A stretch of DNA of 63,866 nucleotides, the filler included, from Octopus bimaculoides (Eukaryota), in assembly GCF_001194135.2 (NCBI RefSeq). It is 4 parts of 4 records of this genome, joined end to end, with 100 filler letters (N's around TTAATTAATTAA, not from the genome) between each part and the next. Parts side by side here need not be neighbours in the genome. Positions count along the whole stretch, not along the records: positions 52,033 to 61,765 come from NC_069003.1; 3 more parts are not named here. One strand, written 5' to 3'. The notes beneath the pieces are model-generated. The model was not told where the DNA came from, did not search any database, and worked only from the letters and a program-made list of their open reading frames with translations. The first letter of the stretch is position 1; the number at the start of each line of letters is the position of its first letter. Position numbers and translations under genes: made by a program. Below, piece by piece: positions 52,993-61,865 of the stretch.

Positions 52993-53549
52993 ATACACAC
53001 ACACACACATTAATTCATCGTCCTCGTCCTCCTCCTTCTCCACAAACTGCATCCCCCCTTTCCCTGTATGTGTGGCAGTCGGGTATAAAGATGACGGGAG
53101 CGGCGGTGGGGAGAGGTGGAAATTGTTAGTGATGCTGATGAGGAGGATGATGATGATGATGATGATGACTGCTTGTATGTAAATGTGTGTGTGTGTGTAT
53201 GTTGGTACGACTATTCGGGATAAGTTGAATGAGAGAGAACACGTGTGTTATTGACTGGTGAATGTGTGTGTGCATGTATATTATATATTTATATATATAC
53301 GCACTGACATATACATGTATACACTCACACACATACACACTTTCAGGGCGGTACGGTGCTTAGGCGCTAAGTTGAAAGGGGAGAGGTGTGCTAGCAAAAT
53401 AACTGACCCTGACCTATATATATATACATATATACATATATATAAAATATAGCTATTTTCTCTCTCTCTCTCTCTCTCTTTCTCTATCTATCTGTATATA
53501 ATTCACACTCACTCCTCCCCTCTCTCTCTCTCTCTGTCTCTCTCTGTGC

Positions 53550-53753
53550 GCGCGTAGACATGCGAACAATAGTAGTCGGAGTGGGAGGCGACATTCAGCT
53601 CCATTCACTCGCAGTTCTGTGCGAGAGAAGGAAACACAAAAGCGCCAGTATGTACGGAGTTGTAGGAGTACGGATAACAAAAACACCGAGGATTCTACCT
53701 GACCTGTTGGTATTGTTGTTGCTGTTATTGTTATTGTCGTAAAGGTTCATGAG
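53550..53753 (+). promoter_or_regulatory. Putative first (5' UTR) exon, possibly ending ATG-AG before a splice donor
   Basis: (CT)n tracts at 53455-53545 precede a unique CpG-containing segment that ends ttcATGAG|GTAAGG (ATG 53749-53751, GT 53754). No convincing partner exon was found. Confidence 0.35.
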
Positions 53754-54334
53754 GTAAGGGTATATATATATATATATACACATGTGTGTGTGTAGCTTTG
53801 TTACTATGCTACTTACTCTCTTCTGTGTCTTGTGTCTATGGAATTATCCCGTACATACGTTTGGAAATGTACAAACGAGTGTGAATAAACTGGCAGTGCC
53901 GTGCCGAACCTGTTGTCCGGTTTCCAGAAATACTGGATCATCGTACGATTTCATCCAATATATACTGTAACCTATATTGAGTAAACAGACCCTGCTTTTG
54001 AAGTTCGTTCATTTGCGTACGCTTACGTTAAGAATAGTTTAGATTTTTGCCTTTTTCTTTTTTAAGTAGGTTGATATAGTATTAAACAGTCTGCTTTAGA
54101 AATTGTATTAATTTGTACCTGTACCTGTTATATATATAATAAAACCATGTTCTTTATTTTTCTTCATTTGATCTTCACATTATGAACATTAAACGATATA
54201 CATAATTAAAGTATGATTTATTTTAAGACTTTTTTGTGGATTAATAATTATCAAACAGTCCCTCCTTCAGAAGGGTATTAATTTGAATCTGTTAAATGCA
54301 ATTTAGTTCCTTATTTTTCATAGTTTATTTTGTG

Positions 54335-55206: not shown

Positions 55207-56203
55207 CCTAGTGGTCATCGTTGCGTTGATTGTCGCAACCCTTAGCTAAATGTATATACAACACATGATAACCACGTTTTTTTTTTCCTTTTGTTGTTGT
55301 TTTTTTCTTTTTTACACTTCACGTTTTCGTCTGATTCTTGTGCATTCTTTCTTCCTTTGGTTGTTTTGGTTCTGATCGTGCAAAATATTCCACCTGTGAC
55401 CACATCATGCAAATGTGCCTTTCTATTTTACAAAAAGAAAAGGGGGGGGGGGAACATTCAGTAGACTGAGCTTTGAAGGATATTTTTGCTGCTATTTCTA
55501 ATAACTAGTGGAACCGGAAAAGGCTTCTTTTCTGATGCCTCGCCTTTTTTATTTTTTTTTAAACCAAGGTTAGACTACTAACTAGATTCATAACAGACCC
55601 AATAATCAATACTATTCGAAATGTTAGTCAGTCAGTTTCTATTTCTAACTTTACATTATCCTATATTCCGTTTTCTTATTTCAAAAGCAGTCTGCGCCAA
55701 TATTTGGCTGTTATTTCTAAGAGTTCGAGCTAGTTTGGCCGTTGACTGTTATTTCTAGCAGGTCTGGCGAGTACATAGAATCTCAGATGTTCTCGTTTAT
55801 GCTGTGTAGCACTGCATATAATGAACAAGTACGTTTTGGTTCATAACCATACTGTGTGTAGTTAAGTGTACACATACATACATACACGATGCCTATGGGC
55901 GATTTCTGCTAGCTAGCCTTTTAATCACACATGCATACAAAATTATATATATTTATATATATATATATATACACGACGTAGAGGGAGATATGTACGGGGT
56001 ATACTCGCGCGTATTCGCATTTAAAACTGTACCAGGAGTACAGCTAGCCCTTTGTATATTGTGAAAGACAGAATACTTACTGTATGTATGTGTGTTGCGT
56101 TTAAGCTACTGACAGACAGGCACTTTAAAGGATAACTAGATCATTGGTGAGCTTAGCAGAGTAGCAAGCTAGTCCCAGTGAAGTTTATATATGTGTGTGT
56201 ATG

Positions 56204-56235
<32 letters not shown>

Positions 56236-57520
56236 CACGCACACATCAGTGGTTTCGTCTTAAATGCATGTAACGTGTGTGTATACAAAAATAGTTCAAA
56301 CTGGAATAATGTCTACGTACACAATGCCGCGTGCGTCTGTGTATTACGTCCTTGTGTGTGTGTGTGTAGGTGTGGCTTTGTGATAAATTTTTCCCCCCAC
56401 TCTCATGGTTCCTGGTTCAGTCTCTCTGCGTGGCATGTTCATTGGTTAAGTATTTCCTGTTATAGATCCGGGCTGACCGGAGCCTTGTTGTGGAATTATG
56501 AGAAAGGGAAACTGAAAGGAGCCTGTTCTGTATGTATGTGTGTGTGTGTGTGTGTGTCTGCTTTTGTGTTTTTCCCCAACCACTACTTGGTGGCCGGTGC
56601 TGGTTTCTTTGCGTCTTCGTAACTTAGTGGTTCGGCAGAAAGTAACTGATTGAATAACGACCAGGGTTTATAAAAATAAGCATTGGGGTGGATTTGCTTT
56701 GTCTAAACTTCAAAGTAGTGCCCCAGCATGTTCGCAGTCTAATGACTGAAACTTATAAAACATCTTGTTTCAGTAAGCCTGGTACTTTTTCTATTCTTCG
56801 TTTTACCGAACCGCTAAGTTACGGGCACATAAACACACCAACACCAGTTGTCAAGCGGTGGGGGGGGGGACAAAGACAAAGGTATACACATAAGGGTTTC
56901 TTTCAGTTTCCGTCCACCAAATCCACTCGCCAGGCTTTAGTAGAAGGTGTCACGCAGTGAGACTGAACCCGGAACAATCTCATTGTTACTTCGTCTCTTT
57001 GGTTTGAGTGTACGCGTGCGTTTATCTATTCAATAAATAACCTACATGAATGTTTGATTTTTCTAGTCACGCTTTTCATCTTAAATAGAGAGAGAGAGAG
57101 ACGCGGAGAGGGTTTACATTTAAGAGGTGCCTGATGAACGGGACATACTAAGCTTGGTGGCAAACAATGAGTAAAAAAGAACACGACACAAACACATACA
57201 CACAATGTGAGAGAGAAAGAGGGAGGACTAACATCAGTTTGGTACAGCCATTCCACTTATTTGGATTTTTATAGACTTTTCTGAAAAATACAAATATTGA
57301 AAAAAAAAAATATTTGTATTTACCCCCGATTTGCGCTCTTGTTTTTATCTACGCCGCACTTGAAACCACCCCTGGGCCGGATCTACAGTTTAAACTGGAT
57401 TCTGTATCCTACCAACGATGTCTGCACATGATACCTTCATGGTTGCTGTACCTCACTGTGAACACTATGTTATTCCACTTGTGAGGGTTATCTCTACAAG
57501 ATACTCTACAGAAATCTTAG

Positions 57521-57581
57521 CCGGCACTGGTTTTTGTTATGTTCCAGCGTCGTGAATGTCGTAACAAAAATCAAGTGCTGG
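57521..57581 (+). ncRNA. Candidate pre-miRNA hairpin
   Basis: ccggcactggtttttgttatg (57521-57541) pairs with cgtaacaaaaatcaagtgctgg (57560-57581): 21 pairs including 3 G-U, with one 1-nt bulge, an 18-nt apical region and UGU at the 5' arm/loop junction. I do not recognise a conserved miRNA family. Confidence 0.45.
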
Positions 57582-57824
57582 TGGCTATGATTTCTATAAT
57601 TTCATGTGATGTAGAAAGTGCACTGCTAGCGCAGCAGAGCAATGTATAGACTTATAAAAACGTTTAATATATACTTTCGTATATTGTAGTTGCATAACGA
57701 AATGCCGCGTCCCTATAAGTCATTAATACCTGTGTTATTGTACCTAGCCATTTCTGGCATACTACGTGCTGACATGCCTAGATTCTGCTGAATCCTATAA
57801 CATATACATACATATATAGATAGA

Positions 57825-58130
57825 TAGGAGTGGTTGTGTGGTAAGTAGCTTGCTTACTAACCACATGGTTCCGGGTTCAGTCCCACTGCGTGGTACTTTA
57901 GCCTCGGGCCGACCAAAGCGTTGTGAGTGGAAACTGAAAGAAGCCCGTCGTATATATATGTGTGTCTGTGTTTACGTCCCCGTAACTTAGCGGTTCAGCA
58001 AAAAAGAGACCGATAGAATAAGTACTAAGCTTACAAAGAATAAGTCTTAGGGTCGGTTTGCTCGACTAAAGGCGGTGCTCCAGCATGGCCACAGTCAAAT
58101 GACTGAAACAAGTAAAAGAATAAAAGAGTA
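57825..58130 (+). mobile_element. SINE family A copy with internal deletions
   Basis: taggagtggttgtgtggtaagtagcttgc...gggttcagtcccactgcgtgg head, and ggcggtgctccagcatggccacagtcaaatgactgaaacaagtaaaag tail. Confidence 0.85.
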
Positions 58131-58429
58131 TGTGTGTGTGTTTACACTCAATTATAAAAGTTTAAAAAAAACACATCCCCATAACAAGCCACCCTAAAAC
58201 TTAATTATCATTCCACGTTCGAACCCACACTACACTGCAGTGTGTACGACTGACTTCATTACCTATAATGCTGTTGTCATTTGGCTGTTGTATCTAGCAA
58301 GGTGATCCGACTACATAGAAACTCCACTCAATTCCTCAATCTATTTAATGTATATCATAAGATTTTACTGTCATAATCGTTTAAAATTAAAATGAATAAA
58401 TACTGCGATTCTAATTGACTGACGCAGGG

Positions 58430-58620: not shown

Positions 58621-58854
58621 AGTTCAAATATATGCTTAAAATTTTAAATAAACTATGAGGAAGTAAAGACCTAAACTGTATTTAACATTCAAATTAATAC
58701 ATTTTTAAATCGGAGTCTGTTTGATAGTTATAATATATCATGCTGTAACCATGTTTATAATGTATACATTATAACATTGATATTTATTGGAAGAAAATTC
58801 AATGAAGGGAAGTAAAGAACATGGTTTTATTTAACAGATACGGGTACAAATTAA

Positions 58855-58997
58855 GGTAAATTTTCAGATTAACACCCGCACGATCTTCACTAGGGTGTTA
58901 GGGTTAGGGTTTTATGGTCAGGTTAGGGTTAGGGACGGAATTCCCTAACCCTAACCCCCTAGTGAAAATCGTGCGGGTGTTAATCTGAAAATTTACC
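58855..58997. mobile_element. 143-bp MITE with 55-bp TIRs, internal TTAGGG repeats and 8-bp TSD (Merlin-like termini)
   Basis: TIRs 58855-58909 and 58943-58997 (2 mismatches) begin GGTAAATTTTCAG. CAAATTAA is duplicated at 58847-58854 and 58998-59005. Confidence 0.85.
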
Positions 58998-59268
58998 CAA
59001 ATTAATACACTTTTAAAGCAGTATGTTTAATCTTTATCAATCCACTTATAAAGGTTAGAAACAAAACAATTTTTATCACACCGTATGCAAGGTAACTTCA
59101 AAAGCAGGGTCTGTTTACAGTGTATTGTACAGTGTTCGTGGTTTTCTGGAAACCAGGTAAGAGATCTGGTACTGTATTTCTGATATCGATTGTGTCCACT
59201 CGAATCGATCTTCTCTCTCCTCTCCTAGAACTTGGCCTAATACAAATTATGAAAAAATTATTATTGTT

Positions 59269-60038: not shown

Positions 60039-60398
60039 NNNNNNNNNNNNNNNNNNNNNNNNNNNNNNNNNNNNNNNNNNNNNNNNNNNNNNNNNNNNNN
60101 NNNNNNNNNNNNNNNNNNNNNNNNNNNNNNNNNNNNNNNNNNNNNNNNNNNNNNNNNNNNNNNNNNNNNNNNNNNNNNNNNNNNNNNNNNNNNNNNNNNN
60201 NNNNNNNNNNNNNNNNNNNNNNNNNNNNNNNNNNNNNNNNNNNNNNNNNNNNNNNNNNNNNNNNNNNNNNNNNNNNNNNNNNNNNNNNNNNNNNNNNNNN
60301 NNNNNNNNNNNNNNNNNNNNNNNNNNNNNNNNNNNNNNNNNNNNNNNNNNNNNNNNNNNNNNNNNNNNNNNNNNNNNNNNNNNNNNNNNNNNNNNNNT

Positions 60399-61020
60399 CT
60401 TGAAACCAAAAAATGGACTTTTTTCTTATGACGCTGACTTGAGCCGCTCAAGCTGCTTGCACTAGATCTCCTTTGTTATCGTTTGGTTTAGGTTTAAAAG
60501 TTCAAAGTGGACTAAACCTTTCATATCCCACCAAACAGATAACAACACCTTACGTGGGTAAAGATCTTCTTTAGCCTGGGTTGCCGATGTTTCTTCTTTC
60601 CCTAACCACTGTCTTCGGTGCTTGACATTTTTATAGAGAACCCATTTCTCGTCACCAGTCACAATTCTGTCCAAAAAAAAAAAGGTTCATTCATGAGACG
60701 TAACAGCAAAGTTGAGCACACGTTCGCTCTCTGCACCCGATTAGACTCGGGATGTTTGTGAGGACTACATTGACCCAGTTTGCTGATTTTTTTTTTTTCC
60801 CGATGGCACGCAGGTGTCGGTGAATGGTTGAATTAACAAATCCAGGCTTCTCTGCTAATTTCTTAACAGTTCCGATGGGATTTTGTTCCAGTAGGTTTTG
60901 AATGACGTCCTTGTCAAGCTCTACAAAATCTTCTAGGACGATGCACGTCTTCTAGACTGTAGTTTCCGGTTCGGAATTTCTGGAACTACTGTTGGCACTG
61001 GCTTACGCTTATTATCGACA
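60399..61020 (-). pseudogene. Mariner (Tc1/mariner) transposase pseudogene, HTH through first catalytic Asp
   Basis: Minus strand gives FQKFRTGNYSL..ELDKDVIQNLLEQNP..HSTIHRHLRAIGK..(W)VPHK..NRVQRANVCSTLLLR..FLDRIVTGDEKWVLYKNVKHRRQWL..YPRKVLLSVWWDMKGLVHFELL..TITKEI*CKQLERL. These are hallmark mariner motifs (WVPHxL, TGDEKW, YPRKVLLSVWWD), with stops and frameshifts. Truncated at a gap. Confidence 0.92.
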
Positions 61021-61169
61021 TCGAAAGTACGAAAGGCCAAGTCGACCTCGGCGTGAATAGAAATCAAAATGTAATGAGCGGCAAGAAATGCTGCGAAGCG
61101 TTTAGTCCGATGTGCTAACGGTTCTGACAGCTGGCTGCCTTTCCGTATGTGCTCCTCGATGTTGATACC

Positions 61170-61501
61170 TTTTGTCTTCTGGTTGTTTCAGTCAATTAAA
61201 CTATGGCCATGCTGGGGTACCGCTTTGAAGTTTTAGTCGAATAAATCGACCCCAATACTTTTTTTTTAAGCCGGTACTTATTGTTGGTCGCTTTTGCTGA
61301 ACCCCTAAGTTAGGGGGATGTAACACGTCAAGTGGTGGGGTACACAGAAACACACACAAACATATATATATACGACGGGCTTCATTCAGTTTCCGTCTAC
61401 CAGATCCACTCACAAGGCTTTGGTCGGCCCGAGGCTATAGTAGAAGACACTTGCCCAAGGTGCCACGCAGTAGGACTGAACCCGAAACCATGTGGTTGGG
61501 G
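61170..61501 (-). mobile_element. SINE family A copy
   Basis: Reverse-complement match to 57825-58130 and co-linear with 3676-4070. Confidence 0.85.
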
Positions 61502-61865
61502 AGAAAAATTAGGCTGAATGGTCCTTGGCGGTACGCTCGACCAGAACCAAGCTGGGTCTCTTAAGCAATACTGAAAACATTATCATGGAAAGCATGCATC
61601 CGACAACGTTGTAAATCTCTTCCTCTCACTCTCTTTCTGTCGCTCTCATTTTCTATTATTAAGATATTAAATATTTTTTAATGAAATAGCAGTGTGAGGA
61701 CCAGAAGTAGTTTGAGCTTGGACGGTTTCTACGTAGAAGAGCCGGTTATATCTTTTACATTACTTNNNNNNNNNNNNNNNNNNNNNNNNNNNNNNNNNNN
61801 NNNNNNNNNTTAATTAATTAANNNNNNNNNNNNNNNNNNNNNNNNNNNNNNNNNNNNNNNNNNNN

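What the first reader, a model, noticed from the sequence alone, without database searches (positions are those of the whole stretch)
57515..57590. Candidate lineage-specific microRNA precursor
A roughly 60-nt hairpin in unique sequence has a 21-bp stem and a UGU motif at the 5' arm/loop junction, with partial basal pairing (tagcc/ggcta). Its three G-U pairs would be A-C mismatches on the minus strand, so the structure is strand-polarised to +. That matches the putative + strand transcript starting near 53.6 kb (possible intronic miRNA). A large expansion of novel miRNAs in coleoid cephalopods is established; I do not recognise this sequence as a conserved family.
Basis: partly seen in the sequence, partly recalled or inferred. 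Interest (0 to 1): 0.7.

Follow-up and report, generated by a model that had tools for sequence, protein, structure and literature searches.

The report
Unverified miRNA-like hairpin in octopus DNA
A real 94-base imperfect palindrome in non-coding octopus DNA would fold into a microRNA-shaped hairpin, but such hairpins occur about once per 8 to 9 kb in the octopus DNA sampled, and nothing available here shows that this one is a microRNA gene.

Summary
Seven more basal pairs (57510-16 with 57589-95) give a stem of 31 pairs (about 33 stem positions) and an 18-nt loop. It folds far better than shuffled sequence (z about -5, 0 of 200 shuffles). Its geometry fits a Drosha/Dicer substrate, and UGU sits at the apical junction.

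The rest is weak or untestable:
- Both strands are equally non-random (z -5.0 and -5.3).
- The three G-U pairs that favour the + strand are offset by two A-C positions at the base. Those are G-U pairs on the - strand. The claimed strand polarity is therefore not significant.
- There is no basal UG, no CNNC and no mirtron splice sites.
- No Rfam family matches (best is mir-153, 22.8 bits against a threshold of 54, with the seed absent).
- I found no trace in the octopus miRNA paper's supplements or in full-text literature.

In 54 kb of octopus DNA, comparable non-microsatellite hairpins occur about once per 8 to 9 kb. That is roughly 3x10^5 per genome, against 164 annotated miRNA genes.

Expression, conservation and genome copy number could not be tested. 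The most likely reading is a neutrally decaying DNA palindrome, possibly MITE-like. I put the probability of a genuine miRNA at about 5%.

The parts
57506..57599 (.). Imperfect DNA palindrome. The arms are 57506-57541 and 57560-57599, around an 18-nt centre. Between the arms there are 5 transition-type differences, 1 transversion and 2 indels.
   Evidence: Arm versus reverse-complement alignment and pair list. Folds of both strands give z -5.0 and -5.3.
57510..57595 (+). Stem-loop that the + strand RNA would form. It has 31 base pairs (7+5+6+13), one U.U mismatch, a 3-nt bulge and a 1-nt bulge on the 3' arm, and an 18-nt loop.
   Evidence: -37.0 kcal/mol for 94 nt, MFEI (folding energy normalised for length and G+C content) 0.97.
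57521..57542 (+). Putative 5p arm (CCGGCACUGGUUUUUGUUAUGU). The Drosha cut is inferred at 11 bp from the basal junction and about 22 bp from the apical junction.
   Evidence: Inference from the structure, using the published ruler model of Drosha. No reads are available.
57540..57542 (+). UGU at the junction between the 5' arm and the loop.
   Evidence: Sequence and structure.
57542..57559 (+). Terminal loop, 18 nt. It may form a small 4-bp inner helix.
   Evidence: minimum-energy structure versus centroid structure.
57561..57583 (+). Putative 3p arm (GUAACAAAAAUCAAGUGCUGGUG). Its 5' end is the weaker-paired end, so it would be the guide strand if the hairpin were processed.
   Evidence: Duplex end energies are -4.7 versus -8.3 kcal/mol. 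This is inference only.

Best explanation
This is a short (about 94 bp) imperfect DNA palindrome in repeat-rich, non-coding octopod DNA. It was most likely created at the DNA level, either by insertion of a small foldback or MITE-like element or by a local inverted duplication. It has since decayed by point mutations and small indels that fall on either arm without regard to strand.

If the + strand is transcribed, the RNA folds into a hairpin with a stem of about 33 positions. Drosha and Dicer could in principle cut such a hairpin, so it is the raw material from which new miRNAs arise. Nothing available indicates that it is a miRNA gene.

Shown: the palindrome, its non-randomness on both strands, and the lack of any family match. 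Inferred: the DNA-level origin and the neutrality.
For: - Both strands fold equally far from shuffled sequence (z -5.0 and -5.3). That is expected of a DNA palindrome and not of an RNA selected on one strand.
- Transition-type differences between the arms split 3 (G-U on +) to 2 (G-U on -), which is not significant.
- The palindrome extends 4 positions beyond the + strand RNA stem. It is flanked by TA on each side of a CAG...CTA terminus, resembling Tc1/mariner-type ends. This is weak evidence.
- The neighbourhood is full of transposon debris: three SINE copies, a mariner remnant and a second, larger palindrome inside a dispersed repeat.
- Comparable non-microsatellite hairpins (unbranched, -35 kcal/mol or lower per 90 nt) number 7 in 54.3 kb of octopus DNA. 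That is about 3x10^5 per genome, against 164 annotated miRNA genes.
- There is no basal UG and no CNNC.
- No Rfam family comes near its threshold.
- No matching sequence or seed appears in the octopus miRNA paper's held supplements or in the full-text literature.
Against: - The geometry is unusually good for a random inverted repeat. The stem has about 33 positions, the loop 18 nt, the two Drosha rulers agree within 1 nt, and the MFEI (folding energy normalised for length and G+C content) is 0.97.
- All three wobble pairs inside the would-be miRNA duplex favour the + strand. The + fold is 5 to 9 kcal/mol more stable than the - fold.
- No second copy was found in the 9.7-kb piece or in 44.6 kb of other octopus DNA. 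The MITE idea therefore has no positive support from copy number.
- Octopus miRNA annotation is admittedly incomplete for species-restricted genes.
Confidence: 0.78

Rival explanations
1. It is a young, octopod-restricted canonical miRNA gene. The + strand transcript would be cut by Drosha about 11 bp above the basal junction (near 57520/21) and by Dicer at the loop. The A/U-rich 3p strand (seed UAACAAA or AACAAAA) would be loaded as the guide.
For: - The stem and loop geometry fits, and more than 16 bases pair in the duplex.
- UGU sits at the apical junction.
- G-U pairs in the duplex are compatible only with the + strand.
- End asymmetry predicts a 3p guide.
- It is single copy in the DNA available.
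- Coleoids have 90 novel miRNA families, and the catalogue is stated to miss species-restricted genes.
Against: - There is no expression or conservation evidence of any kind.
- There is no basal UG or CNNC.
- A 3-nt bulge lies next to the predicted Drosha site on the 3' arm.
- None of 12 possible seed sites appears in the held supplementary tables. This negative is weak, because only 2 of 6 novel miRNA names I tested appear there.
- The structure-only base rate is well under 1% (one search compared).
Confidence: 0.05
2. It is a member or remnant of a short palindromic MITE family of Tc1/mariner type. It would be analogous to the human Made1 elements that gave rise to mir-548. It may or may not yield small RNAs.
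For: - The whole element is two arms of about 36 to 40 nt around a short centre.
- The termini read TA|CAG...CTA|TA.
- It has no coding capacity.
- A mariner remnant lies 3 kb away.
Against: - No other copy exists in 54 kb of octopus DNA. Power is low: only families of more than about 10^4 copies would be likely to show.
- The termini do not resemble the local mariner.
- TA is self-complementary, so the 'target-site duplication' cannot be told apart from the palindrome itself.
Confidence: 0.25
3. It is a double-stranded RNA element inside an intron or UTR that serves, or merely happens to act, as an ADAR A-to-I editing substrate, with no small-RNA output.
For: In octopus, most editing is in introns and 3'UTRs, and this is attributed to hairpin structures there (PMC9699675). 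A stem of about 33 positions is long enough for ADAR.
Against: Transcription of this locus is not shown. No exon or gene could be identified in the piece. Such editing would probably have no functional consequence.
Confidence: 0.1
4. It is a chance hairpin in random sequence.
For: None beyond the general abundance of hairpins in genomes.
Against: 0 of 200 dinucleotide-preserving shuffles fold as well, on either strand. A z of about -5 is far beyond what about 200 independent windows in the piece would give by chance.
Confidence: 0.02

Closest known systems
Canonical animal pri-/pre-miRNA hairpins, including the 90 'Novel' octopus families in MirGeneDB (Zolotarov et al. 2022, PMC9699675)
   Same: An imperfect stem of about 33 positions, an 18-nt loop, an apical UGU, a duplex with 19 to 21 paired bases, and folding energy in the range I understand to be typical of miRNA hairpins.
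   Different: No read, conservation or family evidence is available. It lacks the basal UG and CNNC motifs. It was not found among the seeds or sequences in the held supplements.
Palindromic MITEs that look like, or become, miRNA hairpins (for example human Made1 and mir-548; from my own knowledge)
   Same: A short element consisting almost entirely of two inverted arms, TA on both flanks, and no coding capacity.
   Different: Multi-copy status, which defines a MITE, was not demonstrated. There are zero extra copies in 54 kb.
mir-153 (RF00650) and miR-430 (RF01413), the best Rfam alignments
   Same: Both share the U-rich/A-rich arm core (UUUUUGU/ACAAAA). The 3' arm also contains AAGUGCU.
   Different: The scores are 22.8 and 19.8 bits against thresholds of 54 and 47.3. 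The mir-153 seed UUGCAUAG is absent. AAGUGCU lies about 13 nt into the arm and not at the seed position.

Membership tests
Canonical animal miRNA gene (MirGeneDB / Ambros 2003 / Fromm 2015 criteria) | An imperfect hairpin with at least 16 complementary bases between the 5p and 3p arms | tested here: met
   19 contiguous pairs at 57523-41, or 21 in the alternative register, including 3 G-U pairs and one bulged A.
Canonical animal miRNA gene (MirGeneDB / Ambros 2003 / Fromm 2015 criteria) | A stem of about 35 bp between single-stranded basal flanks and a terminal loop of at least 8 nt | tested here: met
   31 bp plus one mismatch across 57510-57595, with an 18-nt loop. On the - strand, and at the DNA level, pairing continues for 4 more positions.
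Canonical animal miRNA gene (MirGeneDB / Ambros 2003 / Fromm 2015 criteria) | Reads of about 22 nt from both arms with 2-nt 3' overhangs (the Drosha and Dicer signature) | not testable with these tools
   No small-RNA data are reachable. The relevant data are GSE192550 / PRJNA791920.
Canonical animal miRNA gene (MirGeneDB / Ambros 2003 / Fromm 2015 criteria) | Homogeneous 5' ends of the mature reads | not testable with these tools
   Same reason as the previous row.
Canonical animal miRNA gene (MirGeneDB / Ambros 2003 / Fromm 2015 criteria) | Presence in a second species, with arms better conserved than the loop (required for octopus novel families) | not testable with these tools
   No cephalopod genome collection is available. 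The metagenome scan gave only chance 19-mers. Exact ORF look-ups and a six-frame composite protein search found nothing.
Canonical animal miRNA gene (MirGeneDB / Ambros 2003 / Fromm 2015 criteria) | Processing motifs (basal UG, apical UGU/GUG, downstream CNNC) | tested here: inconclusive
   UGU is present at 57540-42. There is no TG in 57495-57522 and no CNNC in 57580-57620. As far as I know these motifs are enriched in miRNAs but not obligatory.
Canonical animal miRNA gene (MirGeneDB / Ambros 2003 / Fromm 2015 criteria) | Not part of a repeat or of another RNA class | tested here: inconclusive
   It is single copy in 9.7 kb plus 44.6 kb. There is no tRNA and no Rfam hit at threshold. Genome-wide copy number is unknown.
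Known miRNA families in Rfam 15 (mir-153, miR-430 and others) | A score at or above the family's gathering threshold, with a conserved seed | tested here: not met
   The best is mir-153 at 22.8 bits against 54, then miR-430 at 19.8 against 47.3. The seeds are absent or misplaced.
Mirtron | Hairpin ends that coincide with a GU donor and an AG acceptor | tested here: not met
   The 5' arm begins AGAAAUC / GCCGGC with no GU donor.
MITE (Tc1/mariner-type, palindromic) | Many dispersed copies in the genome | tested here: inconclusive
   There are 0 further copies in 54 kb. The sample is far too small to exclude families below about 10^4 copies.
MITE (Tc1/mariner-type, palindromic) | Terminal inverted repeats and a TA target-site duplication | tested here: inconclusive
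   The termini read TA|CAGAAATC...GATTTCTA|TA. TA is self-complementary, so it cannot be told apart from the palindrome.

The most novel reading that the evidence does not exclude
An octopod- or species-restricted miRNA that is not yet in MirGeneDB. It would be processed from the + strand with a 3p guide carrying an A-rich seed (UAACAAA or AACAAAA). It may have been born recently from a small palindromic insertion, which would catch miRNA birth in the lineage with the largest invertebrate miRNA expansion.
Probability: 0.05. Interest if true: 0.35.

Novelty: new member of a known kind. Interest (0 to 1): 0.12.

Why it matters
If it were a real miRNA, it would add one more lineage-restricted gene to an expansion that is already documented (90 novel families). 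It might also illustrate miRNA birth from a palindromic insertion. That would be a modest gain.

As it stands, the case mainly shows that hairpin shape alone, even very good shape, predicts a true miRNA in well under 1% of cases in a repeat-rich 2 to 3 Gb genome. It also shows that arguments from G-U strand polarity must count the whole palindrome.

Tried and rejected
1. Rfam on the piece and on the hairpin alone gave only sub-threshold, low-complexity resemblances (mir-153, miR-430). I rejected these because the seeds are absent or misplaced.
2. I searched the supplements of PMC9699675 for 11- to 16-mers of both arms, for 12 possible 8-mer seed sites and for two 7-mers. Nothing was found. The tables are truncated and cover only some miRNAs: 2 of 6 names I tested were present.
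3. A full-text search of about 8 million papers for arm 16-mers gave 0 hits.
4. A metagenome scan for the 5p 19-mer gave 11 hits. None had the second arm or any other similarity, so they are chance matches.
5. Exact-product look-ups of seven window ORFs, meant to reach the same or an orthologous locus or an RNA-seq contig, all came back empty.
6. A 398-aa composite of all six-frame fragments of 57275-57790, searched against 5.8 billion proteins, gave no hit.
7. Mirtron reading: rejected, because there are no splice sites at the hairpin ends.
8. Derivation from the local mariner: no similarity between the hairpin termini and the mariner copies.
9. Clustered miRNAs: there is no second good non-repeat hairpin nearby.
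10. ARAGORN found no tRNA in the piece.

Full report
**What is there.** On the + strand the minimum-energy structure has these parts:
- 13 bp: 57529-41 with 57560-72.
- A bulged A at 57573.
- 6 bp: 57523-28 with 57574-79.
- A 3-nt bulge at 57580-82.
- 5 bp: UAGCC 57518-22 with GGCUA 57583-87.

The complete stem has 31 pairs, about 33 stem positions, with an 18-nt loop (57542-59).

It competes with the tagcc/ggcta pairing for the same two C's. UGU sits at 57540-42 across the apical junction. The three G-U pairs are 57523/79, 57530/71 and 57540/61.

**Is it more than chance?** Yes.
- The 76-nt fold is -28.8 kcal/mol, with z -4.6.
- The 126-nt fold is -41.5 kcal/mol, with z -5.0. In both cases 0 of 200 dinucleotide-preserving shuffles did as well.
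- In a 90-nt sliding scan of both strands of the piece, it ranks third. Only the two strands of a TTAGGG-containing palindrome at 58844-59008 rank higher.

**Strand polarity.** The + fold is more stable than the - fold: -28.8 versus -19.6 for 76 nt, -41.5 versus -36.5 for 126 nt, and -37.0 versus -31.7 for 94 nt. However, the - strand is just as far from its shuffles (z -5.3).

Aligning one arm with the reverse complement of the other shows that the DNA palindrome extends to 57506-57599. It has A-C positions at 57509/96 and 57506/99, and these are G-U pairs on the - strand. The transition-type differences therefore split 3:2, or 3:1 if the terminal pair is ignored. The binomial p is 0.3 to 0.5. 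This is what neutral decay of a DNA palindrome would give, and it is not evidence for an RNA selected on the + strand.

**Fit to a miRNA substrate.**
- The two Drosha rulers (11 bp from the basal junction, about 22 bp from the apical junction; established model, from my own knowledge) both put the 5p start at 57520/21.
- The 3p 5' end is the weaker-paired end (-4.7 versus -8.3 kcal/mol), so 3p would be the guide.
- The MFEI (folding energy normalised for length and G+C content) is 0.97.
- Against this, there is no basal UG and no CNNC downstream.
- A 3-nt bulge lies at the predicted 3' Drosha site.
- There are no splice sites at the ends, so it is not a mirtron.

**Known families.** Rfam gives nothing near threshold, either on the piece or on the hairpin alone. 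The best hit is mir-153 at 22.8 bits (threshold 54), and it lacks the UUGCAUAG seed. The next is miR-430 at 19.8 bits (threshold 47.3), and its AAGUGCU match lies about 13 nt into the 3' arm and not at the seed.

The octopus miRNA study (PMC9699675) reports 164 miRNA genes in 138 families, of which 90 are novel. It required presence in two octopus species, and it says species-restricted genes are missed. Its sequences are held only at MirGeneDB.

In the supplements held here I found none of the following:
- 11- to 16-mers of either arm.
- Any of 12 possible 8-mer seed sites.
- Two 7-mers.

Only 2 of 6 novel miRNA names I tested occur in those truncated tables, so this negative is weak. No paper in the full-text library contains a 16-mer from either arm.

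**Context and organism.** The piece has no convincing coding ORF. It is rich in CA/TA microsatellites, which give sub-threshold mir-297 and mir-466 hits in Rfam. It contains:
- Three SINE-like copies: 56386-56960, 57859-58131 and 61165-61510.
- A frameshifted mariner remnant at 60431-61100 on the - strand.
- An assembly gap at 60040-60430.

The mariner remnant led to annotated SETMAR-like proteins of Octopus bimaculoides and O. sinensis, and from them to 23 kb and 21 kb of their chromosomes. The piece shares SINE and other dispersed repeats with these loci at 80 to 90% identity. An octopod origin is therefore well supported.

The stretch 57400-57720 has no second copy in the piece or in those 44.6 kb. 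The proposed host transcript near 53.6 kb cannot be checked. I saw only a CpG-containing stretch followed by a donor-like GAG|GTAAGG at about 53752.

**Base rate.** In 54.3 kb of octopus DNA (the piece plus L012 and L013), I counted 7 unbranched, non-microsatellite hairpins with an MFE of -35 kcal/mol or lower per 90 nt, including this one. Two of the others belong to repeats. That is about one per 8 to 9 kb, or roughly 3x10^5 in a genome of 2 to 3 Gb, against 164 annotated miRNA genes. This sample is small.

Even allowing tenfold under-annotation and extra credit for good geometry, structure alone gives only a few percent at most.

**Routes to conservation or expression that failed.**
- The metagenome scan returned 11 chance 19-mer matches, none with the second arm.
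- Seven exact ORF look-ups found nothing.
- A 398-aa composite of six-frame fragments around the hairpin found no protein among 5.8 billion.

**Verdict.** The interpretation cannot be decided with these tools.

The best-supported reading is a DNA-level palindrome, possibly a MITE-like insertion with TA|CAG...CTA|TA ends, though this detail is only weakly supported. It appears to be decaying neutrally and happens to have miRNA-like geometry.

My probability that it is a genuine Drosha/Dicer-processed miRNA gene is about 5%. If the locus is transcribed, it could equally be one of the many intronic or UTR hairpins that ADAR edits in octopus. Interest is low unless small-RNA reads or an orthologue with conserved arms turn up.

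Noticed in passing
window 58844-59008: A 165-nt near-perfect palindrome (66-nt arms, 91% complementary). Its inner part is head-to-head telomere-type repeats, (TTAGGG)n facing (CCCTAA)n, around a GAATTC centre. It is the strongest hairpin in the piece (-44.7 kcal/mol per 90 nt). On both strands it gives a sub-threshold Rfam mir-3718 hit, which is an artefact of the palindrome.
   Followed up: partly
window 53981-54330 and 58646-59118: Two inverted copies of one dispersed repeat (68 to 73% identity). The copy at 58646-59118 carries the TTAGGG palindrome. The alignment with the other copy skips about 58855-58997, so the palindrome core is an insertion in one copy or a deletion in the other.
   Followed up: partly
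window 56386-56960, 57859-58131, 61165-61510: Three copies of a SINE-like repeat, the last one inverted. They are 80 to 90% identical to copies in O. bimaculoides CM046603.1 and O. sinensis CM016864.1, which supports an octopod origin for the piece. ARAGORN detects no intact tRNA in them.
   Followed up: yes
window 60431-61100 (- strand): A degraded mariner transposase (HTH_48 and Transposase_1 type) with frameshifts and stop codons, cut off by the assembly gap at 60040-60430. It is 75% identical at the DNA level to a locus annotated as a SETMAR-like gene in O. bimaculoides (L012 10045-10612).
   Followed up: yes
window 53258-53340 and 56187-56250: TA/CA microsatellites score 45 to 48 bits against Rfam mir-297 and mir-466 (thresholds 85 to 90) on both strands. 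These are low-complexity false positives and not miRNAs.
   Followed up: yes
window 53550-53760: A CpG-containing stretch sits downstream of a CT microsatellite and ends in a donor-like GAG|GTAAGG at about 53752. It is plausible as a non-coding first exon, but nothing here can confirm it.
   Followed up: no
L013 3161-3250 and 366-455: Two related hairpins with 33 to 34 pairs in O. sinensis DNA belong to one repeat family. This illustrates that repeat-derived, miRNA-shaped hairpins are common in octopus genomes.
   Followed up: no
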